Of a DNA stretch of 64,000 bases, positions 2,050-64,000 are shown in pieces. A program made the position numbers and the translations under genes. Source of the stretch: Saccostrea cucullata (taxonomy: Eukaryota); contig NW_026937503.1 of NCBI RefSeq assembly GCF_032062105.1, forward strand, positions 1-64,000, in the 5' to 3' direction. Each line of letters begins with the position of its first letter. Position 1 is the stretch's first letter. The notes under the pieces are model-generated. The model saw only the letters and a program-made list of their open reading frames with translations, made no database searches and was not told the DNA's origin.

Positions 2050-2750
2050 ACATTTAACTCCACATTTGAATATATCGACGACGTATTGTCAGTTAACGCG
2101 ATTGTAATTTCCATTCCTACGTCGATACAATAAATACTGGTGAGCTTGAGAAAAAAAGATACCATAGAGTCTGACACATCTGTTTCATATTTTGATATTT
2201 TACTTGAAAAAGACACTAATGGTTATATAACAACCAAGCTTTATGATAAACGTGGTGACTTTAACTTTTCTCTTACTTATGGAGAAATATACCTTCATCA
2301 CCTTATACGGAGTTTATATATCTCAGCTGATTCGATATACAAGAGCATGCTCTCAGTATGAACAATTTCCAAAACGAGGAAAATTATTGACAAACAAGTT
2401 GATGAAACAAGAATATCAGCAGTCTCTTTTAAAATCATTATTTTGTAAGTTGGCCGATACTATGGCCTTATCTATCAACAAATACATTTTATCATTGAGT
2501 CAAATGCTGACTGGCGTTTTTCACACTAATTGTAAGTCCATTATTTATAATTGAATTGACGACTGATTTTTCCCTTATTTCCTGATCATGACGAAAAGCA
2601 CACGGCGGGTGTGGCCGGTCGGCAGAAGATGTTCAGTCTTGTATGGCACATGATCCCACCTCTAATGTTTTGGAGGTCCGTTTTTGCTCTGCTCCTATTT
2701 TGTATTTTATGGACTTTTGATCTTGAGTATTGTTCTTTATCTGCATATGT
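2050..2750 (+). mobile_element. Naiad PLE 3' fragment (RT C-terminus plus conserved 3' UTR/pLTR)
   Basis: YIDDVLS, DTIESDTSVSYFDILL, LYDKRGDFNF, YGVYISQLIRYTRACS; followed by the family 3' motif gcgggtgtg...gatcccacctct...ggaggtccg. Confidence 0.85.
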
Positions 2751-3242
2751 TTCACATATCAAATACAACATTCAACTATGTATAACTTTACTTAAAACGA
2801 TTTATTACCAATTAATTTATCTTATCAATGACATGCATGGTCAAAGAACATGTAACATTTAAATACTTACAAATTCATGATACAAACAGTCTATTTTTAT
2901 GTACCTTCCAGTTTCTATCTTTAAAGTATGAGTTTAAAACATGTAGTTGCTTTTCTGTATTGTACATGAAAAGGCTTCTTCAAAAAATTTTGCAAACAAA
3001 TATGATCAACTAAGTATACAAAATGCATTTTGGTGATTTACATATATGAAATATAACTTTCTGCATAAAAACATCACACGTTGATATATCTAATATAAAA
3101 CGTTTTGACTACTATGAAAGCAATTCAGCCCAATCTAGAGTGAACATTTTATTTTCATTTTTATACTCAAAAAATCGGATGATAGGGATTTTCATTCTCT
3201 ACCATATTTCAATAACATACACTCAAATACAACTATTACTTT

Positions 3243-3640
3243 TTAAGGCACCTCAGTAAAGTCAGGTGACCCATTGCTATCTCTATTCCTCCATTGAAGT
3301 TCGTACATTTTAAACTTCTTCTCTGCAACCGCTTAAAGCTTAACCATTTACAACCAATTTTTGCGTCTATGAGTTAAGGGGGAAATTGTGAATTTTATGG
3401 ACCCTGTCCCCCTGTATCATGATGGGGGTTGGGGCCAAAACCACTAAAAGTACTGTTATCTTTAAAAATCTTCTTCTTTTCTGCTGGACATCAAGCATTT
3501 AAACTGCTGACCTGATTGTAATCAATATTGAGTCCTCTACAAAAAGTGTGAAATTTATGGCCCCAGGGTCAGGAGTTTTAGTGTTTGGGTGGGGCTAAAT
3601 GGATTAGATAGTAATAATGCACTATTTCCCAAAACATAAT
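3243..3640 (+). mobile_element. HINE-like (Helentron-associated) non-autonomous repeat, degraded
   Basis: Starts ttttaaggcacctcag...caggtgacc; internal aaaatcttctt, gtgaaatttatggcccc and ggtggggc units shared with the 37-39 kb repeats. Confidence 0.45.
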
Positions 3641-3727
3641 ACATATCAAAATATTTATGCAATGCTTGAATGAATACGGCAAGCTAAACTGATATCACTA
3701 CAAAAGTATTTTACAAAAATTCAACAG

Positions 3728-18304: not shown

Positions 18305-20630
18305 AAGATATCCCTGTCTTTTTTCGGATGAGATATTAGAAAAAAAATGTTCCAGTCATCAGCAAATTGAAACATATTCAAAATTAATCAGTCATCAGTC
18401 GTACTAAATATAGATTAAACATTTATTTAAAAAAAATATCAAACGGTAGTTTTAGCATGATCAATAAAAAATACGGGGGCTGTTCAATTAAGGAATGTTT
18501 TTAAGTTTTGTGTGAGTTATTGAAGCTAGCGCTTCATGAAAAATATGCCTACGTGCAAGTCTGTGTGATTCACACTCCAATAATTCACACTAAACTGAAA
18601 AACATTCCTTATATTTACATTTTACCTGTTTGGAAGCAACTAAAATATACTCAATATTTGAATTTCTCGCTGATTTTTACTAACGTCGCTACAGCCTCAT
18701 AGTGACGACACGTTTACGCACGTTTCTCCATGTATATTTCTACACGTGAGTATACACAGAAATGACTTTCAAATCAATTTCACAGTTGGCTTAGTAGAAA
18801 AACACAGCAAATGTAAATATTAGATAAAATCCTCGATGCTTGGAAAGAAAAAAAAAACGCTTTTCAATGATGTAGTCTTAATGATTTTACGTAAAATTCT
18901 TTTAAAATGTTTTTAAACATTTTTAACTAATGCCTGATTGTTTTTATAACTCATTTTTGAGTATGACCCTTCGTATACTTGAAAATGGCAGATCCCATGA
19001 TTTCAATGACTTGATACTTCTTTCTGAAAAGATTTTTTTCAAGTTTGGAAAATGAAACAAGTCACAAGGTGAAAGATCTGGCGAATATTGTTGGTGTGAC
19101 AAAACATTAACTTTCTGTTTATCCCCAAAGCTCCTTCACTTTTAAGGACATGCTGTTTTGGATAGTGTCATGAAGAAATTTAATGTAGCGGATTCCTGAT
19201 TTTGGTTCCTCCCTCTCATAAACCTTTCGATTTTTGCAAAGAGTTTGCTTTCTAGACTCCTTCAGAATTTAAAATGCATCCATGAGTATGAATTTGAACA
19301 ACAAGACCAGTAATATTTAAGAAAATGGCATATAAATCTGTCTTTGTGCTTCTGTAATTCTTTCCTCTTCTCAGACCTTTTCTGTTTTTGTCAGGTATAT
19401 CTTATTGTAAATTTTGTTTCGAGGGTTTTAAGCAATAGATACAAGTTTCATTATCTATTTGAATTTCAGACAAATGTTAATAAGTCAATTTCTTATGTTT
19501 TAAAATAATTGTTTAGATATTCTTACACGCTGTCATTTTCAATATTTTTTTTTTTCAAAACATAGGGTGACCTTTGAATACTTAGCTTTCACTGTTAAAT
19601 GTTTCTTAATGATGTCTATCAAATTCATCTATATTCACTAAAACTATCTTCAAGTCAATCATACATAATCAGTGATTATTTGTTGAATATTGGCAAACAG
19701 TACATTGGTTGTTACAATTTCTTGTCGCCAAGGTCGGTGCCCTTTTTTGATGCTCGTTATATTATGTTTGTTCATTGAAATCCACCTGCATATGTGTCTA
19801 TAAAACAGACATTGGTTGCTGTAAATTTGATTATTTCTTTGGATTCTTAACCAGTTTTTCAGCAGCCTTGATGAAGCGCTTAATTTCATTCTATAGTTTT
19901 TTTTATTCTTTACCTTTCATTTTTAATGCAGTGTCTCGAATAGCCCTTTTTCTCTAGCTTTTCACAATGAAACTATGTGATTAAAAGTGGTTACATGAAC
20001 TGTTACAAATTCATTAAAGATCCAATAATGAGAGAAATTCAAGCTTAATGTCATATGATATCTATGTTGTATGTCATAGAGTTATTAGTCTTAGAGGACA
20101 TTATGTATTGAGCAGCCTTCGTAATTAAAATAATGGACTTTTGAGTCTGATTACCGTTAGTTATCTCCATACATGTATATTTCATTAACTAATTTGAACA
20201 GCATGGAACCTCCTTTTAATCTTACATGTTCAAATGTAATTGTTTTAAGGGCTGTGGATGGAAAAGGTTGTTTCATGAAAAAAGCATTGGAATATAACAA
20301 TAAAATTTTAATTTAAAACTCATTAATTTTTCAAGTTAATTAATTTCACCAGAATCGACTGTTTTAACCAACCTATTAATTGTACAAATAACCAAAGAAA
20401 TTATTCATATAAATAGTGAAAAGTTAAGTATTATCATTTGTATTCAAAAACAAAATTTTATGCACTTATAACATACATCAGTAAAATGCACAAATAAATC
20501 CTTCCGCATGGTTCGGACCTACAATTTCCCGTCTCTAGCGCTCAAATTAAGTTCAAGATGTTTGGAATTTTGCATGCTCTTTCGAAAAAACCATTTTCCT
20601 CGGATGAGACCTTAAACACTGACGTCCCGT
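18305..20630 (+). repeat. Segmental-duplication block, paralogous to 49425-51416
   Basis: Near-colinear high similarity by eye, including the mariner element and both flanks; 16120-16650 also matches 46470-46990. Confidence 0.9.
18472..20123 (-). mobile_element. Non-autonomous mariner-like element, copy 1 (extra ~330 bp insert at 18500-18830)
   Basis: TIRs tacgggggctgttcaattaaggaatg and cattatgtattgagcagccttcgta; HTH relic at 19660-19890. Confidence 0.7.
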
Positions 20631-20790
20631 ATTTAACACGCGTAGTTGCTGGCACAAAAAAGATCCGTCATTGCTAAATGATCGTCAATGTCGAGCAGAG
20701 GTAAAAATAGGCAGCTCTCCATCGGCAAGTGGTGGCGACTCTATACAAGTAAAATTTCTCAAGAGATACATTAAACAACAAATAAATAAA
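20590..20790 (+). mobile_element. Degenerate Nin/Deu SINE; uninterrupted paralog of the PLE insertion site
   Basis: cctcggatgagaccttaaacactgacgtcccgt...ggcacaaaaaagatcc...aaacaacaaataaataaa. Confidence 0.65.
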
Positions 20791-49591: not shown

Positions 49592-50922
49592 TACGAGGGC
49601 TGTTCAATAAATAATGTCCTCGTTGCTTGGAAAAAAAAGCTTTTCAATGATGTAGTCTTAATGATTTTACGTAAAAATTCTTTTTAAAATAAGATACACG
49701 TCCGTAACATTTTTAACTAATGCCTGATTGTTTTTATAACTCATTTTTGAGTATGTCCCTTCGTATACTTGAAAATGGCATATCCTATGATTTCATTGAC
49801 TTGTTACTTCTTTCTGAAAAGATTTTTTTCAAGTTTGGAAAATGAATCAAGTCACAAGGTGAAAGATCTGGCGAATATTGTTTGTGTGACAAAACATTAA
49901 CTTTCTGTTTATCCCCAAGCTCCTTCACTTTTAAGGACTTGCTGTTTTGGACGGTGTCATGAAGAAATTTAATGTAGCGGATTCCTGATTTTGGTTCCTT
50001 CCTCTCATAAACCTTTCGATTTTTTGCAAAGATTTTGCTTTCTAGACTCCTTCAGAATTAAAAATGCATCCGCGAGTATGAATTTGAACAACAAGACCAC
50101 TAATATTTAAGAAAATGGAATATAAATCTGTTTTTGTGCTCCTGCAATTCTTTCCTCTTCTCAGACCTTTTCTGTTTTTGTCAGGTATATCTTATTGTAA
50201 ATTTTGTTTCGAGGGTTTTAAGCAATAGATACAAGTTTCATTATCTGTTTGAATTTCAGACAAACGTTAATAAGTACAATTTCTTATGTTTTAAAATAAT
50301 TTAGATATTCTTACACGCTATCATTTTCAATATTTCTTTTTCAAAACATAGGGTGACCTTTGAATACTAAGCATTCAGTGTTAAATGTTTCTTAATTATA
50401 TCTATCAAATTTATCTATCTTCACTAAAACTATCGGCAAGTCAATCATACATAATCAGTGATTATTTGTTGAATATTGGCAAACAGTACATTGGTTGTAA
50501 CAATTCCTTGTCGCCAAGGTCGGTGCCCATTTGTGATGCTCATTATATTATGTTTGTTCATTGAAATCCACCTGCATATGTGTCTATAAAACAGACATAT
50601 GGTTGCTGTAAATTTGACATATTTCAGTGATTATTTCTTTAGGATTCTTAACAAGTTTTTCAGCAGCTTTGATAAAGCGCTCAATTTCACACTATAGTTT
50701 ATTGATTCTTCACCTTTCATTTTTAATGCAGTGTCTCGAATAGCCCTTATTCTCTAGCTTTTCACAATGACACTATGTGATGAAAAGTGGTTACATAAAC
50801 TGTTCAAATTCATTAAAGATCCAATAATGAGAGAAATTCAAGCTAAATGTCAAATGATATCTATGTTATATGTCATAGAGTTATTAGTCATAGAGGACAT
50901 TATTTATTGAGCAGACTTCGTA
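49592..50922 (-). mobile_element. Non-autonomous mariner-like element, copy 2
   Basis: TIRs tacgagggctgttcaataaataatgtcctc and gaggacattatttattgagcagacttcgta. Confidence 0.75.
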
Positions 50923-51375
50923 ATTAAAAAAATGGACCTTTGAGTCTGATTACTGTTCGTTATCTCCACACATGTATATTTCATTAATTAATTTGAACAG
51001 CATGGACCCTCACTTTAATCTTACATGCAAAAATGTAATTGTTCATGGTCTGTGAATGGAAAAGGTTGTGTTTCATGAAAACAGCATTGGAATATAACAA
51101 TAAATTTTTAATTTAAAACTCATTAATTTTTCAAGTTAATTAATTTCACCAGAATCGACTGCTTTAACCAACCTATTAGTTGTACAAATAGCCAGAAAAA
51201 TTGTTCATATAAATAGTGAAAAGCTAAGTATTATCATTTATAATCAAAAACAAAATTTTATGCACTTATAATATACTTCAGTAAAATGCACAAATAAATC
51301 CTTCCGCATGGTTAGGACCTACAATTCCCCGTCTCTAGCGCTCAAATTAAGTTCAAGATGTTTAAATTTTGCATG

Positions 51376-51416
51376 CTCTTTCGAAAAAAGCATTTTCCTC
51401 GGATGAGACCTTATAC
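51376..51416 (+). repeat. Left copy of ~41-bp target-site duplication
   Basis: ctctttcgaaaaaagcattttcctcggatgagaccttatac is identical to 63950-63990; single copy at the paralogous site 20577-20617. Confidence 0.92.
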
Positions 51417-51461
51417 TGTAAAATAAAGTTGCCACCCGGCACCACGTGTGCCGACGGAAGA

Positions 51462-51534
51462 GGACCTGACACCTGAATCGGTGTTTCGGGCACATTTTAG
51501 GAATGTTCCAGGGTCTGCCACTCATCAGAGGTCC
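51462..51534 (-). ncRNA. Type I hammerhead ribozyme (family A, 3' copy)
   Basis: Minus strand GGACCU-CUGAUGA-G(U)GGCA..UGCCC-GAAA-CACC gauuca GGUG-UC^AGGUCC; all core nucleotides and stems I-III present. Confidence 0.9.
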
Positions 51535-51981
51535 AACCCAAATTAAGTTATCATATTTTAGTTGTATATCTCTGGCATGGTGGTGTTTCATGCAATAATA
51601 TTTGTAGTGGACATGTATTCTGTTACTGTTCCACTAATTAAGCTTTGTGAATAAAAAGCTTTATGTTTTGGATATGTCAATGAATAAGACAATATCAAGG
51701 AGAATTAATATTCTCTGTGGTGCGAGCTTAAATTGTTTGCTCGTCTTGTTTTGTGGTACATGTTGTACTAAACGGCTCTTAGATAGAGCTGCAGTTGAGA
51801 TTCGTTAGAATCGGGCGGGGCGACCGTCACATAGTCGCGCTGGAAGAGTTAATGCACGTGGCACGAGAAAGCGCATTGGTTGTTTGTTTGGAGTGTTGGG
51901 TAATTGACAGCCACCTGTTCCCTGATATCTGCTTTGCATGCTTTTCGCTATCACGGATTGTCTGATTTGTTAATTGATATG

Positions 51982-53955
51982 CTATCTGTTCGAGTTTAAG
52001 AGCTCATTTAAGTTTCTATTTCGCTTGTATCCAATGATAGGAGGCATAGGAAATAACTCAGAACACTGTTTATCCTTTTGAATTAATTTCCAATGTTTGC
52101 GTAATATTTTCCCCAGTTTTCTGACTGCAGGATTGTACTTGGTAACAAGCACAGAGGGCGGTCTGTTAGATTTAGTCTTGCTATTTTTTAGCAATTCCTG
52201 TCTATTAATTGTTTGCGTTTCTGAAACAATACTGTCTATTTCAGATTCCGAGTACCCCCTTGATATAAGTCGTTCCTTGAACTGTGAAATTAATTGTTTG
52301 GTTTTGTGTGGGTCAGAGGTGTTCCTCTTATGACGGATAATTTCCCCCTTAATAAATCCTCTGAAGGTAGCATTGGGATGTGCACTGCTGCGATGCAGAT
52401 ACATAAATGTTTCTGTAGGTTTGATGAAAGTTTCAAAGTCTAAGACTCCGGACTGTTTAAATCTCTGTCCTTTGTAGACTTTTGTGTCCAGAAACACAGT
52501 CCCGTTTAAGTGAATATTGTATGTAAATTTCAGGTATTTGTGCTCCTGATTTGCAAGTTCAAAAAACTGCAGTATTTCACTTTCTGTGGCGTCCATTGCC
52601 ATAAAACCGTCATCTCTGTATCTAAAGTGAGCCAGAATTTTGTTTTTATGATTGTATTTTTTGATAATATTTTCAAGGATATCAAAAAGGCGCAGGTCAC
52701 ATATCTCGGGGGACGGGACCGCCCCCATACTGGCTCCTAATATTTGTTTATACAGGTGACCATTAAATTCAAATTCATTGTTCTCTAACAGAATTTGTAA
52801 CAATTTGATTAGGTAACTGATATCTGGGATCGGTATTGTAACATCAGTTTGTTTCAATTTTGTGAGTGCTTTTGCTGCAGATTGGAGAAGTTCCGTGGCT
52901 GTCATGTTAGTATACATGGAAGTTACATCATAGGTAACTAGCCGGGTTTCGGGTTTCAAATGCAGGGATTCAACTTTGCTGATAAAGTGTTTGGTATCTC
53001 TGACATATGTGTGTTGTTTTTGTACTAATGGCACAAGGAAGTAGTCTATGAAGTGCCCTATAGGCATTGTAGGGGAGGCGCATTGAGAGATAATTGGCCT
53101 CCCCGGTATACTCATTCCACGCTGCAGGGCCTCGGCCCCTTTGAAGTTTTCAATGTCAGAAATGCAGATTTTATGTATTTTAGGTAGTAAGTATAACCTG
53201 CCAGGGCGGAATGTAAGGGACTGCGACAGAAATCTGTGGGTAATACTGTCGATTTCAGAATTGATTTGCATTTCACATACAATCTTGTTGATCAGATCGT
53301 GTATTTCATGTGTTCTGTCTTTGTGAATTGCGGCGTAATGAATGCCGTCATTTAAATGTCTTAGTCCCTCCGCTGCATAATTTGTGCGGTTCTGAACTAC
53401 AACAGTAGTAGATTTGTCTGCCTTTTTTATTACAATGTTTGTCTCGTTTCGGAGACTGGTCAGCGCATTCCGCTCTTTTTTTGTTAAATTATCTCTAAAT
53501 TTGTGAAAGTGGATTTTACATAGCTCCATTTTGGTTGCATAGAGATAATTTTCTAAAGCTGTGCACGTTGTGTTGCCGGGATTATAATTCGTATTGATAT
53601 ATAAGGGATGCAATTGTTTATCATCCTCATTTGTATGAAAGAGTATCTTGCATCTCATTTTCCTGGCTAGTTCATTGAAGCTACAGATCAAATTCTGTCT
53701 TATATTTTGCGTCCCTGGTGTGGGAATAAATTTGAGACCTTTGCTAAGTAAAGATGTTTCAGCTTCAGACAGAGTATAATCTGAGAGATTGAGAACATTG
53801 TTATTAGTGTTCTCTGACAGGCGTTTAATACGCCTGATATTGCGAGCTTTTCTGTTGTTCGCTCGTCTTATTTTATATTTTTTCTGTTTTTGCGTTTTGG
53901 AGAGCCTCCTGCTAGGCATGTTAGCGTAGTGCCGATCTGGGAGCCAAATCTGCAT
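51982..53955 (-). CDS. PLE reverse transcriptase without GIY-YIG domain (family A, 657 aa; alternative start 53919)
   Basis: NLSDYTLS..LLSKGLKFIP, IKKADK, YLLPKIHK, PGRPIIS, YDVTSMYTN, YKQILGASMG, RYRDDGF, FLDT, YLHRSSAHP, RGY; stops right after YKRNRNLNELL. Confidence 0.95.
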   Translation of the reverse strand: MQIWLPDRHYANMPSRRLSKTQKQKKYKIRRANNRKARNIRRIKRLSENTNNNVLNLSDYTLSEAETSLLSKGLKFIPTPGTQNIRQNLICSFNELARKMRCKILFHTNEDDKQLHPLYINTNYNPGNTTCTALENYLYATKMELCKIHFHKFRDNLTKKERNALTSLRNETNIVIKKADKSTTVVVQNRTNYAAEGLRHLNDGIHYAAIHKDRTHEIHDLINKIVCEMQINSEIDSITHRFLSQSLTFRPGRLYLLPKIHKICISDIENFKGAEALQRGMSIPGRPIISQCASPTMPIGHFIDYFLVPLVQKQHTYVRDTKHFISKVESLHLKPETRLVTYDVTSMYTNMTATELLQSAAKALTKLKQTDVTIPIPDISYLIKLLQILLENNEFEFNGHLYKQILGASMGAVPSPEICDLRLFDILENIIKKYNHKNKILAHFRYRDDGFMAMDATESEILQFFELANQEHKYLKFTYNIHLNGTVFLDTKVYKGQRFKQSGVLDFETFIKPTETFMYLHRSSAHPNATFRGFIKGEIIRHKRNTSDPHKTKQLISQFKERLISRGYSESEIDSIVSETQTINRQELLKNSKTKSNRPPSVLVTKYNPAVRKLGKILRKHWKLIQKDKQCSELFPMPPIIGYKRNRNLNELLNSNR

Positions 53956-54649
53956 TGATTGCTAAGAAAAGTGAACAAGGTATGATCAACAGGGGTTCCC
54001 TGGGGGTGTAATTCAACCGCACAGATTAACATGCGGGTTTATCTTGGGGCACCGGCAGGCATGCGTTTACTTCTTAGGTGCAGTAAAGATCTGTGAATAC
54101 CTGCATGATGCAATAGGTAAAAAGCATGATTATATTATTTGACATCAAGCTTGCTGCGGGACAAAGTATAGGTTCTGTCCAGCAGGATGGGGATATGGTG
54201 TGTGTTCAAACCCTGAGGTTAAGAGTGACACTGAGAATTCTTGTAGATGTTGCAGTCAGGTTAATTTCTAGTTGGCGCACATTGTGCAATTGTAATTGTA
54301 AATTCCCTTGTTTTGGTGATTGTATCAATAAACGCCTTTTTATGCACTATGAGGTATGCCAAACCATACCTATAGTTGAAGATGGAGATAGACTATGACT
54401 GTTAACTGTGATTTATTGTACATATATTTTAATATGTTAAGGTTTTCATAGTACAAAATATGTTTGTTTTAAGTTTATAAGCTCAATGTACAATAAACGT
54501 TTCTTCTTTAAATGGTTCATAAGTTTGATATGGCGGTAGATCTTACCATATGTATAAGCAGTCCAACAATATCAATTGTCCCGTGTATATACACGTAAGA
54601 TATGGCGTTCAACCATCACAATTGATTATATGACAGGTAACTAATCATG

Positions 54650-55480
54650 TCACTTATGAGTTGGATCTTGTAGCATATTGGTCAATTTCCTTAGTTCTTG
54701 GATAATAGACGGTTGGGCGGTCCTGGATCTTCTCTGAGCATTGTCACGTCCTCTAGACCATGGTCTAGGCTGGCTGGTCCTTGGGCGTTTCTGCTCGTCA
54801 TGTCTAGCGGGTGCACGCATTTTGTATTGATTTATCTTCTCAGTCCACTTTTGTTTGAGAACTTCCAGGTCAGAAAAGAATTTGGCCCGGTGAGTGCCCG
54901 CTTCACGATCATTTATCGTTAATTTGTTTTTGGTCTCGGTTACTTTTTCCTTGATTTCCTCGTTTTTTTCGCGGATGATATGTGCACATTTTTCTTGTAG
55001 TGTGGTTATGAGTTTGAGGAGCCCCTTCTGATGGAGGTCTTTGATGATACCCTTAAATATTTCCTGGCTAACTTCATCACAGCTTGCTGTAAAGTTTATC
55101 TGAAAGCTGAGGAAGGCGGGTAGATTTGGGTTTTCCGCACCGGTGTCCACCTGGTCGATGCAATGTTTGATGGTGGCGATTCTGTGTCTTTTAAACATAA
55201 GAGTGTCAACTTCCTTGATGGTGCTCTCCACCATTTTTTGGTATTCTTCACTTTTACTCGCTGATGCGACGAGTGTTGTTTCGTTTAGGTCCAGATCAGG
55301 ATCACTATCGTACATGTAGTCGGGTGGTGTGTCCTTTTGTTTTTGGCCCGGTGTAGGGTAGCTGTGCGTCAAATCAAGATTGTCAGTCTCCATGTCATTG
55401 TTATCCATATTTGCCATATTCCAATGTAGCAATGGAGGGATAAAACTGCTTTTGGTGGATTTACGGAGACCTGAGGACAT
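54650..55480 (-). CDS. Family A ORF1: acidic N-terminus, predicted coiled coil, Arg-rich C-terminus (open to 55669; ATGs at 55480 and 55417)
   Basis: Long ORF co-oriented with and upstream of the RT, inside the repeat unit; K/E-rich helical stretch, then KRPRTSQPRPWSRGRDNAQRRSR. Confidence 0.75.
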   Translation of the reverse strand: MSSGLRKSTKSSFIPPLLHWNMANMDNNDMETDNLDLTHSYPTPGQKQKDTPPDYMYDSDPDLDLNETTLVASASKSEEYQKMVESTIKEVDTLMFKRHRIATIKHCIDQVDTGAENPNLPAFLSFQINFTASCDEVSQEIFKGIIKDLHQKGLLKLITTLQEKCAHIIREKNEEIKEKVTETKNKLTINDREAGTHRAKFFSDLEVLKQKWTEKINQYKMRAPARHDEQKRPRTSQPRPWSRGRDNAQRRSRTAQPSIIQELRKLTNMLQDPTHK

Positions 55481-56190
55481 TTGTTGTGAATTCAGAATTC
55501 TTAATGACACTTGGATCTTATAAAAAGTGTTTATGTAGTTTTGTGGGGGGTACGTCCTAATTAAGCGTAATTCCCCGCTATTGAAATGTGACCGAGCTGC
55601 ATATAGGTGTTGAGTTTGATTTATTAGCATCCATGTGAAATTGTGAATTTCAATTTCCGCTGAGATCAAGGGAAGTGGGGGATTGGTGTGAGTTACGGTT
55701 TGTTAGAACCGAATGACAGCCTGAGAATTGGCTGTATGAGGTTTTTGTATCCCTTGCAGGTGTTTGTGGATGGTGGACTTTGGTTTAATTTATGAGATGA
55801 CAGGCGCAGTGTTTGATTGCAAGACAATACTCTATCGTATATATTGATTGTGTATTGTATATTTCGCTCTGTCCTCTGTGTTAAACTTAGTTTGGTTCTG
55901 GCAGATCTATAGTGGGATCTGGCGCAAGTATTTTACTTTATTAGAGGAGTTCATGTAATAAATGATATTTTGCTATTTTGATTTAGAAAGTTCAGTTTGT
56001 TAAAGAAGTTCGTTAAAATATAGTGTGTGCCCGGAACACCAATAATGGTGACACGTGCCTCAACCGACCTAGCACACGGATCGAGAATGGATTCCAAATC
56101 GATACACGGGAGGGTGACAAGGGGTACGAGGTACCAAGATCACAGTGTAAAATAAAGTTGCCACCCGGCACCACGTGTGCCGACGGAAGA

Positions 56191-56263
56191 GGACCTGACA
56201 CCTGAATCGGTGTTTCGGGCACATTTTAGGAATGTTCCAGGGTCTGCCACTCATCAGAGGTCC
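56191..56263 (-). ncRNA. Type I hammerhead ribozyme (family A, 5' copy)
   Basis: Identical to 51462-51534. Confidence 0.9.
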
Positions 56264-56710
56264 AACCCAAATTAAGTTATCATATTTTAGTTGTATATCT
56301 CTGGCATGGTGGTGTTTCATGCAATAATATTTGTAGTGGACATGTATTCTGTTACTGTTCCACTAATTAAGCTTTGTGAATAAAAAGCTTTATGTTTTGG
56401 ATATGTCAATGAATAAGACAATATCAAGGAGAATTAATATTCTCTGTGGTGCGAGCTTAAATTGTTTGCTCGTCTTGTTTTGTGGTACATGTTGTACTAA
56501 ACGGCTCTTAGATAGAGCTGCAGTTGAGATTCGTTAGAATCGGGCGGGGCGACCGTCACATAGTCGCGCTGGAAGAGTTAATGCACGTGGCACGAGAAAG
56601 CGCATTGGTTGTTTGTTTGGAGTGTTGGGTAATTGACAGCCACCTGTTCCCTGATATCTGCTTTGCATGCTTTTCGCTATCACGGATTGTCTGATTTGTT
56701 AATTGATATG

Positions 56711-57220
56711 CTATCTGTTCGAGTTTAAGAGCTCATTTAAGTTTCTATTTCGCTTGTATCCAATGATAGGAGGCATAGGAAATAACTCAGAACACTGTTT
56801 ATCCTTTTGAATTAATTTCCAATGTTTGCGTAATATTTTCCCCAGTTTTCTGACTGCAGGATTGTACTTGGTAACAAGCACAGAGGGCGGTCTGTTAGAT
56901 TTAGTCTTGCTATTTTTTAGCAATTCCTGTCTATTAATTGTTTGCGTTTCTGAAACAATACTGTCTATTTCAGATTCCGAGTACCCCCTTGATATAAGTC
57001 GTTCCTTGAACTGTGAAATTAATTGTTTGGTTTTGTGTGGGTCAGAGGTGTTCCTCTTATGACGGATAATTTCCCCCTTAATAAATCCTCTGAAGGTAGC
57101 ATTGGGATGTGCACTGCTGCGATGCAGATACATAAATGTTTCTGTAGGTTTGATGAAAGTTTCAAAGTCTAAGACTCCGGACTGTTTAAATCTCTGTCCT
57201 TTGTAGACTTTTGTGTCCAG
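56711..57220 (-). pseudogene. 5'-truncated duplicate of the family A RT C-terminus (part of the pseudo-LTR)
   Basis: Matches 51982-52491. Confidence 0.9.
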
Positions 57221-57634
57221 TTTGGATCTTATTTAATGTACAATAATTTCATAATGTATAGACCAGTCTAATACTTGTACATTTTAACTACTCTGACGTT
57301 TTTAATAACATTGATATTATCAAGGAAGCTACATCTTTGTTTGTTTTGAATGCAATATTCCTTATATTATAATCTCTAATTATTTTAGAACTTGTGTTTT
57401 TACTTCTTAAAACATTTGACCAACAACATGGTCACCTATTGGTTGATTGTATTAGCTTCAGTTTGACTGAAAGGAGGCGTGGCTATTCGCTTCTGCGCGC
57501 TTCTTTCATCTTCTTGACATTGCTTTTATTTAGCCAGTGCGAGTAAGCACGGCAGGATTAATTTTTGTGCCACTTATTTGTTTGCTTTGCAAATTATACA
57601 CGGAAATTTTATTATCAATTACGTATGTGCCTTA

Positions 57635-57766
57635 TACCCTCTATTAATACGCTCAGACGTATTATAGACGTGGTGTTATTATAATTAATCGGCACTTATT
57701 GGTTTACCCTCTATTTATACGCTCAGACGTATAATAGACGTGGTGCTTTTTTATATTATCAGCAAC
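57635..57766 (+). repeat. 70-bp-period imperfect duplication upstream of the family B RT (also ~61605-61736)
   Basis: taccctctatt(a/t)atacgctcagacgtat(t/a)atagacgtggtg at 57635 and 57705. Confidence 0.85.
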
Positions 57767-57840
57767 ATCATTTATCCTCTGAGATAATTAATTCAATCTT
57801 AAACCATTAGAGTTATAAGATATTCAAGCCGTTTCTAACA

Positions 57841-59787
57841 ATGGCGCGACGTTTCAGGCGTCTAGATAAACAGAAGAAAAGTGTATTAAGAGCGTCTAAT
57901 GCATTTGCTCATAAACAACGTATTCACAGAGCAAGCGTAATAAATGCAAAAAAATTTGTTCTTAATTTATCCTCATGTGGTCTTCAAGATAACGAATACA
58001 TACTGCTAGCCAAAGGACTTAAATTCATCCCGTCACCACAAAGCAGCAATGTCAAAAGGTTTCTCCTAAAGGACTTTGACGAGTTTTCTAGAAAACTCAG
58101 ATGCAAATTCTTCTTTGATACCGGGGAAAATAATAAACTTCATCCCTTCAGAACATCTACTGGTTATAAACCCGATCAGGCATGCGGTGCTCTTGAAAAT
58201 TATATTGACAAAACCAAATTAGAATTATCATCTATGCCAATAAAACAATATCGGGATAATTTAACTAACCAGGAAAGGGCGGCATTGGTCTCATTAAAAA
58301 ACAATCGCCATATTGTAATCAAAAAAGCTGATAAAAGTAACACTGTGGTCATCATGGACAGAGATAAATATGTCACTGAAGCTTTACGTCAACTTGAATC
58401 AAAACACTACCTTGAAGTTGAAAAACCTGATTTGTCACATTTACGTAATACCATACAAGAAAAAATATCTGATATGTTTATTGGAGGAGCTTTAGACAAA
58501 GAAACATATCGTTATCTAAGTGATAGCGATTCGTCCCTTAAATGCGGACATTTATACTTGCTCCCTAAAATACACAAGATCAAAGATAAAATCATGACTG
58601 CCCTTATGAACGGCACTTGCAGCCTCAGACGGCTACCACCTGGGCGACCAATTATTTCACAATGCGATACACCAACACATAGGATTGGTGCTTACTGTGA
58701 TTATTTTCTTATCCCGATTGTTCAAAAACAATCGACGTACATAAAGGATACTACGGATTTCATCAATAAAATCGAAGCCTTATGCTTACCATCGCAAATC
58801 ATACTGATCACTTATGATGTTACAAGTATGTATACTAACATGGAGTTTGATGAATTATTAAGCGCTGTTGAAGAGGCCTACCGAAATAACAAACGAGATT
58901 TATCAGATCTGCCTTATCCCGAGGTCTCAGATCTCCTCTTTCTTCTAAAGTGCATACTTGAAAATAATTATTTTGAGTTTAATGGAAAATATTACAAACA
59001 AATAATCGGTTGCGCAATGGGTTCAACTGTTTCCCCTGAGGTATCTGATATAAGAATGTTCCAGATAACTCAATCAATCATGGCGCAATTTCAATATGCC
59101 AATAAAGTCTTGTTTCACGGCAGATTTAGAGATGATGGTTTTATTATTTTCAACGGGTCTGAGAATGAGATTCTTGATTTCTTTCAAATTGGCAATCAAT
59201 GCCACCCGCATTTGAAATTCACTTTTGAAATCTCAATTGACTCTGTGAATTTTTTAGACACAACAGTGTACAAAGGAAGAAAATTCCAAGAATCCAACAA
59301 ACTAGATATTAAGTCGTACATTAAACCAACAAATAATTTTCAATATCTACACAGAGAAAGCTCTCACAACCCAGCAGTATTCAAAGGTTTCATTAAGGGA
59401 GAATGCATTAGACATATGAGAAATACCAATGACAATGCAACCCTCAGCACAATCCTACAAGACTTCAAGAAACACTTGTCAAAGAGAGGCTACTCTGATA
59501 CAGAAATAGACCCTATTATCACAGACGTAACTGGAACGGACAGAAATAAGATGCTAAACAAAAACAACAGTGAATCTAAACTCTGCAATCCATTAGTTAT
59601 GGTTACAAAATATAATCCGAGAATCAAAGGATTAAAAAGACGCATCTTAAAATATTGGAATGAAATGAAAACAGACACAAGATGCAAAGAAATATTTACA
59701 TCGGAACCAGTTGTAGCTTATAGCAAGCACAAAAGCATAGGAGATATGATTATAAGATCACGTTTACCACAAGAATACAACTGCTAA
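57841..59787 (+). CDS. PLE reverse transcriptase without GIY-YIG domain (family B, copy 1, 648 aa)
   Basis: LAKGLKFIP, IKKADK, YLLPKIHK, PGRPIIS, YDVTSMYTN, YKQIIGCAMG, RFRDDGF, FLDT, YLHRESSH, RGY; ends AYSKHKSIGDMIIRSRLPQEYNC*. Confidence 0.95.
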   Translation: MARRFRRLDKQKKSVLRASNAFAHKQRIHRASVINAKKFVLNLSSCGLQDNEYILLAKGLKFIPSPQSSNVKRFLLKDFDEFSRKLRCKFFFDTGENNKLHPFRTSTGYKPDQACGALENYIDKTKLELSSMPIKQYRDNLTNQERAALVSLKNNRHIVIKKADKSNTVVIMDRDKYVTEALRQLESKHYLEVEKPDLSHLRNTIQEKISDMFIGGALDKETYRYLSDSDSSLKCGHLYLLPKIHKIKDKIMTALMNGTCSLRRLPPGRPIISQCDTPTHRIGAYCDYFLIPIVQKQSTYIKDTTDFINKIEALCLPSQIILITYDVTSMYTNMEFDELLSAVEEAYRNNKRDLSDLPYPEVSDLLFLLKCILENNYFEFNGKYYKQIIGCAMGSTVSPEVSDIRMFQITQSIMAQFQYANKVLFHGRFRDDGFIIFNGSENEILDFFQIGNQCHPHLKFTFEISIDSVNFLDTTVYKGRKFQESNKLDIKSYIKPTNNFQYLHRESSHNPAVFKGFIKGECIRHMRNTNDNATLSTILQDFKKHLSKRGYSDTEIDPIITDVTGTDRNKMLNKNNSESKLCNPLVMVTKYNPRIKGLKRRILKYWNEMKTDTRCKEIFTSEPVVAYSKHKSIGDMIIRSRLPQEYNC

Positions 59788-59790
59788 GGT

Positions 59791-59930
59791 GGACCCCTGA
59801 TGAGGCGGGCCTTAGGGCATATAGCCGTTTTTTTAAAAAACCGCCGAAACACTCTTTACTATATAATGATGTATGAATCAAAATTAAAATTAAAAAAATG
59901 TCACAAAGTTTGGTTAAGAGTGTCGGGTCC
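59791..59930 (+). ncRNA. Type I hammerhead ribozyme with enlarged loops (family B, copy 1)
   Basis: GGACCC-CUGAUGA-GGCGG..(32 nt)..CCGCC-GAAA-CACUCUU..(59 nt)..AAGAGUG-UC^GGGUCC; begins 3 nt after the RT stop codon. Confidence 0.9.
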
Positions 59931-60293
59931 TAATAAATTTCATGAACAGTTTGGCTGATTGATGTCCTTTTTCTCACACCTTGTATCTAGGGACAATGTC
60001 CCACAGGCATCATCCCACAGGCATCATCCCGTGAATCGCCTTCTTTGAACGCGATCGACTTGTTCTTAATTTATTGGGGCTTCTCCCTCTGACCATTTTC
60101 GACATTTTTATTGAAACCAAAAGAACAGTAACACATTAACGCTTCCTAGCTAATTTTTTCATCCGCTTATAATGGGAGACCTCTTGAACATCACAGAATT
60201 CGATTGATTTATTACAATCTAAGGAGTGATACCGAGATTGACATCTCAAAGTTATATAGTTAAATTCTGCACAATTACAACACTTAAGACGTA

Positions 60294-61031
60294 ATGCTAC
60301 AAAGACTTAGTCGACTTTCTCTGAAAAAAGCAACCAAAGCTAACATGGATGACGATTTCCAGATACCGTCAAACCAAGAAGCCTTGTCACAGATTGATGA
60401 TTTGGATTTAAAAATCCGTTTACCGGACGCAAATAATACCTACACGAGAGCTACAGAAAATGGATTGGCTGAAATATCAAAAACTCTCAAAGAACGACTC
60501 TAACTAATTAGTCTAATTCATGGTAACAGGACCGGGAATTACCCTACATGGTATAATGTAAACACAAAGTGTTTCCTAAACCTACCTAATGAGCAGGAGG
60601 AGCAGAAATTCAGGAGTTTCTGGAAAGAACTGAGCAACGCCATCGAAAAACAAGCCTCGCAGAAAGTAATAGACTTCCTCGCAAACCAAATCAAGGAAAA
60701 GGAAAATGAGGCCAACAGGATTAGGGCTGAGAACATAAAGCGTGTAGGTTTTGCTACAGAGGAAAGTGCCTCTATCAGAAAACAGTTGGACACAGACATC
60801 CTCAATCTACACAATGAAAACACAAAGGAACTGGAGGATTACCGCAGGCATTTGGGCTCTATGCAACAGAGCTCCTCTAACTCTAGGACTGCAACAGCCT
60901 CCAAGGCCCCAGGAAGGAACACCCGAGTACCTCGGAAGGACTGGAATCATCACAACCAAAGAAACTCTTTCTCAGGTTATCGTCCTCAAGAGAAAAGAGG
61001 TCAATTCCGACGAAGATACCACCCATATTAA
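60294..61031 (+). CDS. Family B ORF1 (245 codons, one in-frame TAA at 60501-60503): predicted coiled coil, basic tail ending RRRYHPY
   Basis: ORFs 60294-60503 and 60786-61031 are in the same frame and the sequence between them is open (LISLIHGNRTGNYPTWY...FRSFWKEL...IKEKENEANRIR). Confidence 0.75.
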
Positions 61032-61810
61032 CAGTCTTACATGTGGACTTGAAACATCCTCTCATCTGGTGATGTTTATTTTTAATTATCTGTGCGTACT
61101 ATAATTACTACAAACAATAGTGACATCTGCAATATGGAAAACTTTACTAGTGAGGTCTATCGAATATTCGGGCGGATTAAAAATATTATGCAGTTTGGAT
61201 CTTATTTAATGTACAATAATTTCATAATGTATAGACCAGTCTAATACTTGTACATTTTAACTACTCTGACGTTTTTAATAACATTGATATTATCAAGGAA
61301 GCTACATCTTTGTTTGTTTTGAATGCAATATTCCTTATATTATAATCTCTAATTATTTTAGAACTTGTGTTTTTACTTCTTAAAACATTTGACCAACAAC
61401 ATGGTCACCTATTGGTTGATTGTATTAGCTTCAGTTTGACTGAAAGGAGGCGTGGCTATTCGCTTCTGCGCGCTTCTTTCATCTTGACATTGCTTTTATT
61501 TAGCCAGTGCGAGTAAGCACGGCAGGATTAATTTCTGTGCCACTTATTTGTTTGCTTTGCAAATTATACACGGAAATTTTATTATCAATTACGTATGTGC
61601 CTTATACCCTCTATTAATACGCTCAGACGTATTATAGACGTGGTGTTATTATAATTAATCGGCACTTATTGGTTTACCCTCTATTTATACGCTCAGACGT
61701 ATAATAGACGTGGTGCTTTTTTATATTATCAGCAACATCATTTATCCTCTGAGATAATTAATTCAATCTTAAACCATTAGAGTTATAAGATATTCAAGCC
61801 GTTTCTAACA

Positions 61811-63757
61811 ATGGCGCGACGTTTCAGGCGTCTAGATAAACAGAAGAAAAGTGTATTAAGAGCGTCTAATGCATTTGCTCATAAACAACGTATTCACAGA
61901 GCAGGCGTAATAAATGCAAAAAAATTTGTTCTTAATTTATCCTCATGTGGTCTTCAAGATAACGAATACATACTGCTAGCCAAAGGACTTAAATTCATCC
62001 CGTCACCACAAAGCAGCAATGTCAAAAGGTTTCTTTTTAAGGATTTTGACGAATTTGCTAGAAAACTCAGATGCAAATTCTTCTTTGATATCGGTGAAAA
62101 TAATAAACTTCATCCCTTCAGAACATCTACTGGTTATAAACCCGATCAGGCATGCGGTGCTCTTGAAAATTATATTGACAAAACCAAATTAGAATTATCA
62201 TCTATGCCAATAAAACAATATCGGGATAATTTAACTAACCAGGAAAGGGCGGCATTGGTCTCATTAAAAAACAATCGCCATATTGTAATCAAAAAAGCTG
62301 ATAAAAGTAACACTGTGGTCATCATGGACAGAGATAAATATGTCACTGAAGCTTTACGTCAACTTGAATCAAAACACTACCTTGAAGTTGAAAAACCTGA
62401 TTTGTCACATTTACGTAATACCATACAAGAAAAAATATCTGATATGTTTATTGGAGGAGCTTTAGACAAAGAAACATATCGTTATCTAAGTGATAGCGAT
62501 TCGTCCCTTAAATGCGGACATTTATACTTGCTCCCTAAAATACACAAGATCAAAGATAAAATCATGACTGCCCTTATGAACGGCACTTGCAGCCTCAGAC
62601 GGCTACCACCTGGGCGACCAATTATTTCACAATGCGATACACCAACACATAGGATTGGTGCTTACTGTGATTATTTTCTTATCCCGATTGTTCAAAAACA
62701 ATCGACGTACATAAAGGATACTACGGATTTCATCAATAAAATCGAAGCCTTATGCTTACCATCGCAAATCATACTGATCACTTATGATGTTACAAGTATG
62801 TATACTAACATGGAGTTTGATGAATTATTAAGCGCTGTTGAAGAGGCCTACCGAAATAACAAACGAGATTTATCAGATCTGCCTTATCCCGAGGTCTCAG
62901 ATCTCCTCTTTCTTCTAAAGTGCATACTTGAAAATAATTATTTTGAGTTTAATGGAAAATATTACAAACAAATAATCGGTTGCGCAATGGGTTCAACTGT
63001 TTCCCCTGAGGTATCTGATATAAGAATGTTCCAGATAACTCAATCAATCATGGCGCAATTTCAATATGCCAATAAAGTCTTGTTTCACGGCAGATTTAGA
63101 GATGATGGTTTTATTATTTTCAACGGGTCTGAGAATGAGATTCTTGATTTCTTTCAAATTGGCAATCAATGCCACCCGCATTTGAAATTCACTTTTGAAA
63201 TCTCAATTGACTCTGTGAATTTTTTAGACACAACAGTGTACAAAGGAAGAAAATTCCAAGAATCCAACAAACTAGATATTAAGTCGTACATTAAACCAAC
63301 AAATAATTTTCAATATCTACACAGAGAAAGCTCTCACAACCCAGCAGTATTCAAAGGTTTCATTAAGGGAGAATGCATTAGACATATGAGAAATACCAAT
63401 GACAATGCAACCCTCAGCACAATCCTACAAGACTTCAAGAAACACTTGTCAAAGAGAGGCTACTCTGATACAGAAATAGACCCTATTATCACAGACGTAA
63501 CTGGAACGGACAGAAATAAGATGCTAAACAAAAACAACAGTGAATCTAAACTCTGCAATCCATTAGTTATGATTACAAAATATAATCCGAGAATCAAAGG
63601 ATTAAAAAGACGCATCTTAAAATATTGGAATGAAATGAAAACAGACACAAGATGCAAAGAAATATTTACATCGGAACCAGTTGTAGCTTATAGCAAGCAC
63701 AAAAGCATAGGAGATATGATTATAAGATCACGTTTACCACAAGAATACAACTGCTAA
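61811..63757 (+). CDS. PLE reverse transcriptase without GIY-YIG domain (family B, copy 2, 648 aa)
   Basis: Five amino-acid differences from 57841-59787. Confidence 0.95.
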   Translation: MARRFRRLDKQKKSVLRASNAFAHKQRIHRAGVINAKKFVLNLSSCGLQDNEYILLAKGLKFIPSPQSSNVKRFLFKDFDEFARKLRCKFFFDIGENNKLHPFRTSTGYKPDQACGALENYIDKTKLELSSMPIKQYRDNLTNQERAALVSLKNNRHIVIKKADKSNTVVIMDRDKYVTEALRQLESKHYLEVEKPDLSHLRNTIQEKISDMFIGGALDKETYRYLSDSDSSLKCGHLYLLPKIHKIKDKIMTALMNGTCSLRRLPPGRPIISQCDTPTHRIGAYCDYFLIPIVQKQSTYIKDTTDFINKIEALCLPSQIILITYDVTSMYTNMEFDELLSAVEEAYRNNKRDLSDLPYPEVSDLLFLLKCILENNYFEFNGKYYKQIIGCAMGSTVSPEVSDIRMFQITQSIMAQFQYANKVLFHGRFRDDGFIIFNGSENEILDFFQIGNQCHPHLKFTFEISIDSVNFLDTTVYKGRKFQESNKLDIKSYIKPTNNFQYLHRESSHNPAVFKGFIKGECIRHMRNTNDNATLSTILQDFKKHLSKRGYSDTEIDPIITDVTGTDRNKMLNKNNSESKLCNPLVMITKYNPRIKGLKRRILKYWNEMKTDTRCKEIFTSEPVVAYSKHKSIGDMIIRSRLPQEYNC

Positions 63758-63760
63758 GGT

Positions 63761-63900
63761 GGACCCCTGATGAGGCGGGCCTTAGGGCATATAGCCGTTT
63801 TTTTAAAAAACCGCCGAAACACTCTTTACTATATAATGATGTATGAATCAAAATTAAAATTAAAAAAATGTCACAAAGTTTGGTTAAGAGTGTCGGGTCC
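63761..63900 (+). ncRNA. Type I hammerhead ribozyme (family B, copy 2)
   Basis: Identical to 59791-59930. Confidence 0.9.
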
Positions 63901-63949
63901 TAATAAATTTCATGAACAGTTTGGCTGATTGATGTCCTTTTTCTCACAC

Positions 63950-63990
63950 CTCTTTCGAAAAAAGCATTTTCCTCGGATGAGACCTTATAC
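63950..63990 (+). repeat. Right copy of ~41-bp target-site duplication
   Basis: Identical to 51376-51416; followed by actgaggtcc, which matches the continuation of the empty site (actgacgtcc at 20618). Confidence 0.92.
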
Positions 63991-64000
63991 ACTGAGGTCC

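What the first reader, a model, noticed from the sequence alone, without database searches (positions are those of the whole stretch)
51376..63990. Two different retroelement families fused head-to-head inside one 41-bp TSD: apparent two-sided RT healing of a break
Seen: family A's 3' end abuts the left TSD and family B's 3' end abuts the right TSD. Their truncated 5' ends join through a shared CAG (57218-57220; A continues cagaaac at 52489, B is preceded by tatg at 61187). The TSD is perfect and unusually long. Inference: a staggered break with ~40-nt 3' overhangs gave two primers. Each was extended on a different element RNA and the two cDNAs were joined by microhomology. This is twin priming with two templates, a telomerase-like repair reaction needing no element-encoded nuclease. 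Alternatively, A and B travel together as one bidirectional composite.
Basis: partly seen in the sequence, partly recalled or inferred. Interest (0 to 1): 0.88.

Follow-up and report, generated by a model that had tools for sequence, protein, structure and literature searches.

The report
Two retroelement families, one insertion site
Two related endonuclease-less Penelope-like retrotransposons sit 5'-end to 5'-end inside one genuine 41-bp target duplication. This is the usual inverted Penelope layout, but built from two different families, which argues that each arm was copied from its own RNA at its own DNA end.

Summary
The 41-bp repeat is perfect, and three paralogous uninterrupted sites carry it only once, so it is a true target-site duplication with no target loss.

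Family A lies on the minus strand and family B on the plus strand. Their reverse transcriptases (RTs) are 44% identical. Each arm ends at its family's canonical 3' terminus against one copy of the duplication. The truncated 5' ends meet at a 3-nt CAG overlap, and that junction occurs nowhere else in the 1.17-Gb assembly.

Both families are Penelope-like elements (PLEs). They form partial tandems, carry a hammerhead-like motif about 50 nt from the 3' end, and encode ORF1 plus a roughly 650-aa RT with no GIY-YIG nuclease.

A partial tandem with an adjacent inverted 5'-truncated copy inside one duplication is the textbook PLE layout. Same-family head-to-head structures with variable, asymmetric junctions are common in this genome. 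A PLE protein is also reported to cleave and extend both target strands in vitro.

The two-primer, two-template reading is therefore well supported, but it is a heterotypic case of a known behaviour, not a new reaction. The claim that no nuclease is needed is unproven. Public read data (contigs only) neither confirmed nor refuted the junction.

The parts
51376..51416 (.). Left copy of the 41-bp target-site duplication
   Evidence: Perfect repeat. Present once in three paralogous empty sites.
51417..56145 (-). Family A full unit (4729 bp); its 3' terminus abuts the left copy of the duplication
   Evidence: Self-BLAST. The same 3' terminus is seen in about 28 other copies.
51462..51534 (-). Family A hammerhead-like motif (type I layout). 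The predicted cut lies 51 nt from the 3' terminus. A second copy lies at 56191-56263.
   Evidence: Core sequence and three helices paired by eye and in the MFE fold. The Rfam Hammerhead_1 match is weak (13.6 bits, E 1.8, below the gathering score).
51982..53955 (-). Family A RT ORF (657 aa), no nuclease domain
   Evidence: No GIY-YIG pattern in six frames.
54650..55669 (-). Family A ORF1 (up to 339 aa, basic C-terminus), no Pfam match
56146..57220 (-). Family A upstream 5'-truncated tandem copy (unit positions 3655-4729), 100% identical to the full copy
57218..57220 (.). CAG microhomology at the A/B 5'-to-5' junction (A unit position 3655, B unit position 1212)
   Evidence: The junction is unique in the assembly.
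57218..59979 (+). Family B upstream 5'-truncated tandem copy (unit positions 1212-3970), containing an intact RT ORF at 57841-59787
   Evidence: It differs from the downstream copy by 11 substitutions plus a 3-bp indel.
59980..63949 (+). Family B full unit (3970 bp) with ORF1 remnants (60294-61031) and the RT ORF at 61811-63757. Its 3' terminus abuts the right copy of the duplication.
   Evidence: The same 3' terminus is seen in about 31 other copies.
63761..63901 (+). Family B hammerhead-like motif with very large loops. The predicted cut lies 54 nt from the 3' terminus. A second copy lies at 59791-59931.
   Evidence: Paired by eye, and helix III appears in the MFE fold. No Rfam match.
63950..63990 (.). 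Right copy of the 41-bp target-site duplication
20577..20617 (.). Paralogous uninterrupted (empty) copy of the target in the same window

Best explanation
This is one insertion event of the kind Penelope-like elements (PLEs) normally make, but with two families taking part.

Proposed steps:
1. The target carried two opposite-strand nicks 41 bp apart. The top strand was cut after ...TATAC and the bottom strand was cut at the left edge of the 41 bp. This leaves two 41-nt 3' overhangs.
2. The top-strand 3'-OH primed reverse transcription of a family A RNA at A's usual initiation point.
3. The bottom-strand 3'-OH primed a family B RNA at B's usual initiation point, with 2 nt (CT) of primer-template match.
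4. Each cDNA ran for more than one unit: 1.23 units for A and 1.70 units for B. The template was either a tandem read-through transcript, or the RT jumped to a second RNA.
5. The two growing cDNA 3' ends then annealed at CAG and each was extended on the other. This completes both strands and leaves the 41 bp duplicated.

Shown here: the true target duplication, the canonical 3' ends, the unique junction, the 3-nt overlap, and the absence of a nuclease domain in A and B.

Inferred: that both arms were made in one event, the order of the steps, and the source of the nicks (host damage or a nuclease from another element).
For: - True target duplication with no target loss.
- Both outer ends are the families' canonical 3' termini.
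- There is no second duplication at the inner junction, only a 3-nt overlap.
- The junction is not found elsewhere. Among the roughly 40 best 3'-end hits of each family, this is the only contig holding both.
- Seven same-family head-to-head structures have asymmetric, different breakpoints in the two arms and mostly 0-3 nt of overlap. Two independently growing cDNAs would give this; a simple fold-back would not.
- 3' termini are often joined to internal positions of another copy, which shows that the RT readily starts on a fresh template from a DNA 3' end.
- The two B copies within the arm differ, with 8 of 11 substitutions clustered in 61 bp. The arm is therefore not a post-insertion duplication.
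- Literature: the inverted-plus-tandem layout inside one duplication is typical of PLEs (PMC3846280, PMC2377424, PMC8557442). A PLE protein cleaves and extends both strands and initiates internally on its RNA (PMC11167929).
Against: - This is a single case. No read or second individual confirms the inner junction. Only assembled contigs of public runs were available, and none of the listed pieces bridges 57218-57220.
- A 3-nt overlap is only weakly above chance.
- In the one other head-to-head insertion whose empty site could be reconstructed (C1879), there is no duplication. About 5 bp of target is missing and there is a 59-bp filler. Nine short insertions show no duplication of 10 bp or more. 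A long duplication is therefore not the rule for these families.
- Same-family pairs outnumber this mixed pair by at least 7 to 1. Either the two arms are usually not drawn independently, or A and B are rarely co-active.
Confidence: 0.65

Rival explanations
1. Two sequential insertions. One family inserted first and made the 41-bp duplication. Later the other inserted exactly at the boundary between the first element's truncated 5' end and the neighbouring duplication copy, without making a duplication of its own.
For: Insertions of these families without any duplication do exist, so a second, duplication-less insertion is mechanistically possible.
Against: The second element's 3' terminus would have to land to the base on the edge of the duplication copy, within a locus of several kb. 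No extra or lost target bases are seen against the three empty paralogs. Head-to-head pairs are far too frequent among same-family copies to be chance neighbours.
Confidence: 0.13
2. One primer only. A B cDNA was primed at the bottom strand, and the RT then switched onto a free family A first-strand cDNA or an antisense A RNA. The far end was then ligated to the left overhang.
For: Template switching is frequent in these families. An antisense or self-priming template was proposed for PLE inverted repeats (PMC3846280).
Against: The switched-to template would need a 5' end exactly at A's canonical 3' terminus, which is what a cDNA primed from the top-strand overhang would be. The model therefore collapses into the two-primer model, or else needs an extra end-joining step onto a 41-nt overhang.
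Confidence: 0.1
3. Assembly chimera. Two separate loci or alleles were joined falsely at the A/B junction.
For: No listed public contig bridges the junction. PLE tandem and inverted structures are known to be hard to assemble (PMC8557442, PMC3846280).
Against: The outer flanks are the two halves of one continuous sequence in three paralogs, with exactly 41 bp duplicated. A false join of unrelated loci would not produce this. An assembler would not join on a 3-nt overlap. The runs found are contigs of possibly different individuals, so their silence says nothing about absence.
Confidence: 0.07
4. A and B form one bidirectional composite element that moves as a unit.
For: Both families are young and structurally alike.
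Against: The junction is unique in 1.17 Gb. All other A and B copies examined occur without the other family. Inverted junctions elsewhere all differ.
Confidence: 0.03

Closest known systems
Canonical Penelope-like element (PLE) insertion structure: partial tandem (pseudo-LTR) plus an adjacent inverted 5'-truncated copy, all inside one target duplication (Penelope of Drosophila virilis; Pen2/Pen3 of Adineta vaga; Naiad)
   Same: 5'-truncated upstream tandem copy; inverted copy joined 5'-to-5'; 3' ends facing outward; one duplication around the whole insert; hammerhead motif near the 3' end or pseudo-LTR (PMC2377424, PMC3846280, PMC8557442).
   Different: Here the two arms belong to different families (RTs 44% identical). 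The elements have no GIY-YIG nuclease and carry a separate ORF1. The duplication is 41 bp, against 8-10 bp reported for A. vaga. There is no palindrome at the inverted junction.
Two-strand cleavage and extension by a PLE protein in vitro (PAc of Anolis carolinensis, PMC11167929)
   Same: Both target strands serve as primers, and reverse transcription starts at an internal site of the RNA. In A and B, tandem junctions show that the template continues past the 3' terminus.
   Different: PAc has its own nuclease. The assay used one RNA species. Joining of two cDNAs was not shown.
LINE-1 twin priming, and 5'-to-5' joined pairs of independent L1 insertions in tumours (10.1101/2024.08.27.596794)
   Same: Both 3'-OH ends of a staggered break are used. 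The result is an inverted arrangement with microhomology at the inner junction. In tumours, two distinct L1 copies were found joined at their 5' breakpoints.
   Different: Classical twin priming uses one RNA, with the second primer annealing internally. The tumour cases bridge different chromosomal breaks, with the two duplication copies on different chromosomes. Here both arms start at the canonical 3' site and lie inside one ordinary duplication.
Endonuclease-less PLE clades (Athena, Coprina) and EN-less offshoots of Neptune and Chlamys
   Same: RT without a nuclease; an ORF1 is present; hammerhead motifs; reliance on available 3'-OH ends (PMC8557442).
   Different: Athena and Coprina attach to telomeric overhangs and are reported not to share the tandem/inverted layout (PMC3846280). 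A and B are interstitial, show that layout, and have no telomere-repeat tail at their 3' ends.

Membership tests
Penelope-like elements (PLE) | PLE-type RT, with N-terminal conserved region, a DKG-type motif and the RT core | tested here: inconclusive
   Pfam RVT_1 matches only weakly (E 0.0011, below the cut-off). The motifs KADKS / KADKG, RPIIS and RxRDD are seen by eye in A, B and their homologs, and they resemble PLE motifs as named in PMC8557442 and from my own knowledge. No phylogeny with reference PLE RTs was made. There is no PDB relative.
Penelope-like elements (PLE) | Partial-tandem organisation (pseudo-LTR) with frequent 5' truncation | tested here: met
Penelope-like elements (PLE) | Frequent adjacent inverted 5'-truncated copy (head-to-head) | tested here: met
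   Seven same-family cases plus this one.
Penelope-like elements (PLE) | Hammerhead ribozyme motif in the repeated 3' region | tested here: inconclusive
   The core CUGAUGA...GAAAC and three helices can be paired in both families. Rfam gives only a sub-threshold hit for A and none for B. Cleavage was not tested.
[quoted passage not shown] | GIY-YIG endonuclease fused to the RT (C- or N-terminal) | tested here: not met
   The RT ORFs stop just after the thumb region. No GIY-YIG pattern is found in six frames. Homologs of about 645 aa in several bivalves end at the same point, and the 831-853-aa relatives are longer only at the N-terminus.
Telomere-attached EN- PLE (Athena/Coprina) | Terminal location, with reverse-complement telomeric repeats at the 3' end | tested here: not met
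   The insertion is interstitial and lies between continuous flanks. The 3' termini end in ...TTTTACA and ...CTCACAC, with no repeat tract.
Twin-priming-type insertion (two 3'-OH primers at one staggered break) | Inverted arms with 3' ends outward, a single duplication, and microhomology at the inner junction | tested here: met
Twin-priming-type insertion (two 3'-OH primers at one staggered break) | Both arms made in one event | not testable with these tools
   This needs alleles from other individuals or an experimental system. The reads available were uninformative contigs.

The most novel reading that the evidence does not exclude
RTs of an endonuclease-less, interstitial Penelope-like clade heal pre-existing staggered chromosome breaks. 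They extend both 3' overhangs on whatever element RNAs are at hand, here two different families. The two cDNAs then prime each other to close the gap. This would be a telomerase-like, nuclease-independent repair and insertion pathway operating inside chromosomes.
Probability: 0.25. Interest if true: 0.75.

Novelty: new variant of a known kind. Interest (0 to 1): 0.48.

Why it matters
How Penelope-like elements build their tandem and inverted insertions is still described as undefined. One published proposal is self-priming on a single (antisense) template.

A head-to-head insert whose arms come from two families cannot arise by fold-back of one template. The seven asymmetric same-family junctions point the same way. 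Together they support separate cDNAs primed from both target strands, which matches the two-strand extension reported in vitro.

The locus also shows that nuclease-less members of this group can insert inside a chromosome with a clean, long target duplication. That raises the question of who makes the nicks.

Tried and rejected
- **Rfam.** A scan of 50000-64000 gave no hammerhead at E <= 1. Narrow scans gave a sub-threshold hit for A only.
- **Pfam and PDB.** Pfam gave only a weak RVT_1 match. PDB sequence search gave nothing.
- **Public reads.** Only assembled contigs of four runs could be laid on 51300-57299. No listed piece bridges the A/B junction, and contigs entering B at 57218 carry the canonical B upstream sequence. 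This is uninformative about presence or absence.
- **Large genome fetches.** The survey therefore rests on 3.2-kb loci around the hits.
- **Flank comparison.** Simple comparison of flanks found no duplication for five other head-to-head pairs, for about nine short insertions, or for about 40 3' ends within the sequence available. The 5' boundaries of old copies are uncertain.
- **Empty-site reconstruction.** It worked for C1879: no duplication, about 5 bp lost, and a 59-bp filler. It failed for C14374 and C8353, where the two flanks belong to different repeat families.
- **Predicted palindrome.** A palindromic centre predicted for the C8096 A/A structure was not found. The left arm runs through it.
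- **Composite element.** This reading was rejected.
Full report
**1. What is there**

The 41-bp sequence at 51376-51416 recurs perfectly at 63950-63990.

Between the two copies, self-comparison shows two arms.
- **Arm A (minus strand).** A full 4729-bp unit runs 56145->51417. Upstream of it lies a 1075-bp 5'-truncated tandem copy, 57220->56146, which is 100% identical to the unit's 3' part.
- **Arm B (plus strand).** A 2762-bp 5'-truncated copy (57218-59979) is followed by a full 3970-bp unit (59980-63949).

No other A or B sequence occurs in the window.

**2. The 41 bp is a real target duplication**

The left flank matches three other places in the assembly at 94-96% identity, one of them in this window.
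- The left flank (49632-51414) aligns to 18850-20614.
- The right side (63950-64163) aligns to 20577-20790.

The paralog therefore holds the 41 bp once. An alignment with the paralogs on C9965 and C12831 shows the same thing...GCATG, then the 41 bp, then ACTGAGG..., without interruption. No target base was lost or added.

**3. What the elements are**

*Coding content.* Each family has a roughly 650-aa RT ORF: A at 51982-53955 (minus strand), B at 57841-59787 and 61811-63757. The two are 44% identical over their whole length. Family A has an upstream ORF1 with a basic tail. Family B has ORF1 remnants in two frames.

*No nuclease.* Pfam sees only a weak RVT_1 match. No GIY-YIG pattern is found in any frame.

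*Homologs.* Relatives up to 69% identical occur in Pinctada, Saccostrea, Mytilus and Argopecten, and in marine metagenomes. Nearly all are 640-660 aa long and end at the same point. The 831-853-aa relatives are longer only at the N-terminus. The host is therefore probably a marine bivalve (inference). The lack of a nuclease is a property of the whole clade and not decay of these particular copies.

*Hammerhead-like motifs.* Both families carry the core CUGAUGA...GAAAC with three pairable helices. The predicted cut lies 51 nt (A) or 54 nt (B) before the 3' terminus. Rfam support is sub-threshold for A and absent for B.

These features are the hallmarks of Penelope-like elements: partial tandems, 5' truncation, inverted copies and hammerhead motifs (PMC8557442, PMC3846280, PMC2377424). 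Among them, A and B form an endonuclease-less, two-ORF, interstitial kind. Such EN-less offshoots are mentioned for Neptune and Chlamys (PMC8557442). I did not place A and B in a tree.

**4. The ends and the inner junction**

*Outer ends.* About 28 other A 3' ends and 31 other B 3' ends in the genome stop at the same bases (...TTTTACA and ...CTCACAC) that touch the duplication here.

*Primer-template matching.* In most copies the next base is C, which is also the next base in tandem junctions. This suggests 1-2 nt of pairing between primer and template. Here B has 2 nt (CT) and A has none.

*Inner junction.* It is A unit position 3655 against B unit position 1212, with exactly 3 shared bases (CAG).

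*Uniqueness.* A 301-bp probe across the junction finds only this locus in 1.17 Gb. All other hits stop at the junction on the A side or the B side. Among the best roughly 40 3'-end hits of each family, no other contig carries both families. The composite-element alternative is therefore rejected.

**5. Head-to-head is the families' habit**

Same-family inverted pairs with 3' ends outward occur on C1879, C11339, C8353, C19796 and C16598 (family B), and on C14374, C11045 and C8096 (family A).

The six junctions I could read, given as left-arm | right-arm unit positions:

| Junction | Join |
|---|---|
| 3335 \| 3831 | 1 nt overlap |
| 3214 \| 258 | 15 nt overlap |
| 3194 \| 4243 | 0 |
| 2772 \| 3458 | 1 nt filler |
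| 1792 \| 3302 | 39-nt filler with a small fold-back |
| 2880 \| 3290 | 0 |

The C8096 junction is also asymmetric: the left arm reaches position 767 or lower, while the right arm starts at 1422 or higher. Variable, asymmetric breakpoints are what two independently elongating cDNAs would give. A simple hairpin would give symmetric palindromes.

In addition, many 3' termini are joined directly to internal positions of another copy. The RT therefore readily restarts at its canonical site from a DNA 3' end.

**6. Mechanism**

*Geometry.* A's cDNA lies on the top strand, continuous with the left flank plus the 41 bp. B's cDNA lies on the bottom strand, continuous with the right flank plus the 41 bp. 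The top strand was therefore open at the right edge of the 41 bp and the bottom strand at its left edge.

*Closure.* The two cDNA 3' ends can pair at CAG and copy each other. This closes both strands and duplicates the 41 bp.

*Arm B's template.* The two copies in arm B differ by 11 substitutions and a 3-bp indel, with 8 substitutions inside 61 bp. Its template was therefore heterogeneous: either a read-through RNA from a diverged tandem donor, or two different RNAs.

*Arm A's template.* The two parts of arm A are identical.

*Published proposals.* One proposal for PLE inverted repeats is self-priming on one (antisense) template (PMC3846280). A more recent in vitro study reports that a PLE protein cleaves and extends both strands and initiates internally on its RNA (PMC11167929). 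A mixed-family insert fits the second and cannot be made by the first.

*Analogues in LINE-1.* These are twin priming, and the 5'-to-5' joined pairs of independent L1 copies seen in tumours (10.1101/2024.08.27.596794).

**7. What is not shown**

*One event or two.* I cannot show directly that both arms arose in one event. The sequential-insertion rival needs the second element's 3' end to land exactly on the edge of the duplication copy. That is unlikely but not excluded.

*Source of the nicks.* A and B encode no nuclease, but nuclease-bearing PLEs abound in bivalves (PMC8557442) and could act in trans.

*Target outcomes elsewhere.*
- The one other head-to-head insert with a reconstructable empty site (C1879) has no duplication, about 5 bp missing, and a 59-bp palindrome-rich filler.
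- Nine short insertions show no duplication of 10 bp or more.
- Two further cases could not be resolved.

This spread is suggestive of pre-existing breaks, but the sample is too small to decide.

*Length of the duplication.* Published PLE duplications that I could read are 8-10 bp (PMC3846280), so 41 bp is long by that standard.

**8. Assembly check**

One search for sequencing runs returned only assembled contigs of public runs. I laid them on 51300-57299. No listed piece bridges 57218-57220, and contigs entering B there continue with the canonical B upstream sequence. Contigs show presence and not absence, and the source individual is not identified, so this neither confirms nor refutes the junction.

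Two points argue strongly against a false join: the flanks match three empty paralogs, and the join has only a 3-nt overlap.

**9. Verdict**

The two-primer, two-template reading is the best explanation (about 0.65). It is a mixed-family instance of a layout that is standard for Penelope-like elements and not a new reaction. The nuclease-free, telomerase-like part remains a hypothesis (about 0.25).

The value of this locus is as a natural experiment showing that the two arms of a PLE inverted insert come from separate templates. It also shows that a nuclease-less PLE clade inserts inside chromosomes.

The scan's first readers noted the same stretch under other headings: the EN-less clade, the hammerheads and ORF1.

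Noticed in passing
window 18850-20790 versus 49632-51416 plus 63950-64163; also C9965:29360-29677 and C12831:5549-5862: The insertion target lies in a repeated segment of at least 1.8 kb, with at least four copies at 92-96% identity, two of them 31 kb apart on this contig. I did not determine whether this is another mobile element or a segmental duplication.
   Followed up: partly
window 60000-60027: This B copy has a 14-bp tandem duplication just after the tandem junction. Other genomic B copies lack it.
   Followed up: partly
window 58065-58125 versus 62035-62095: Eight of the 11 substitutions between the two B copies of the arm fall in one 61-bp patch inside the RT ORF's N-terminal part. 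This causes 3 of the 5 amino-acid differences and looks like a recombination or template-switch patch.
   Followed up: no
loci L007, L013, L018, L020, L025, L047, L048, L065, L079, L083: The canonical 3' termini of A or B are joined directly to internal positions of another copy of the same family. Some of the trailing pieces are very short (29-72 bp) and resemble the 'tail' described for PLEs.
   Followed up: partly
C1879:8927-13672 (L071, L092, L066): A young B/B head-to-head insert sits in a high-copy repeat. Compared with more than 10 empty copies, it has about 5 bp of target missing and 59 bp of palindrome-rich filler at the right end.
   Followed up: partly
3' flanks of about 60 A and B copies: The first flanking base is C in roughly three quarters of copies of both families, matching the next template base in tandem junctions. 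This suggests that short primer-template pairing sets the start of reverse transcription.
   Followed up: no
C14374:440121-442406 and C8353:240264-252139: The two flanks of these head-to-head complexes belong to different repeat families, in each case with a satellite on one side. Either the elements sit at repeat boundaries, or the insert bridges two different breaks.
   Followed up: partly
window 57635-57694 / 57705-57764 (and 61605-61664 / 61675-61734): Two roughly 60-bp direct repeats, 87% identical, lie in the B region upstream of the RT ORF.
   Followed up: no
C14581 versus C4848; C8353 versus C699: These contig pairs carry the same insertion with the same flanks, so they are probably haplotigs or duplicated assembly. 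No such partner exists for the window's locus.
   Followed up: no
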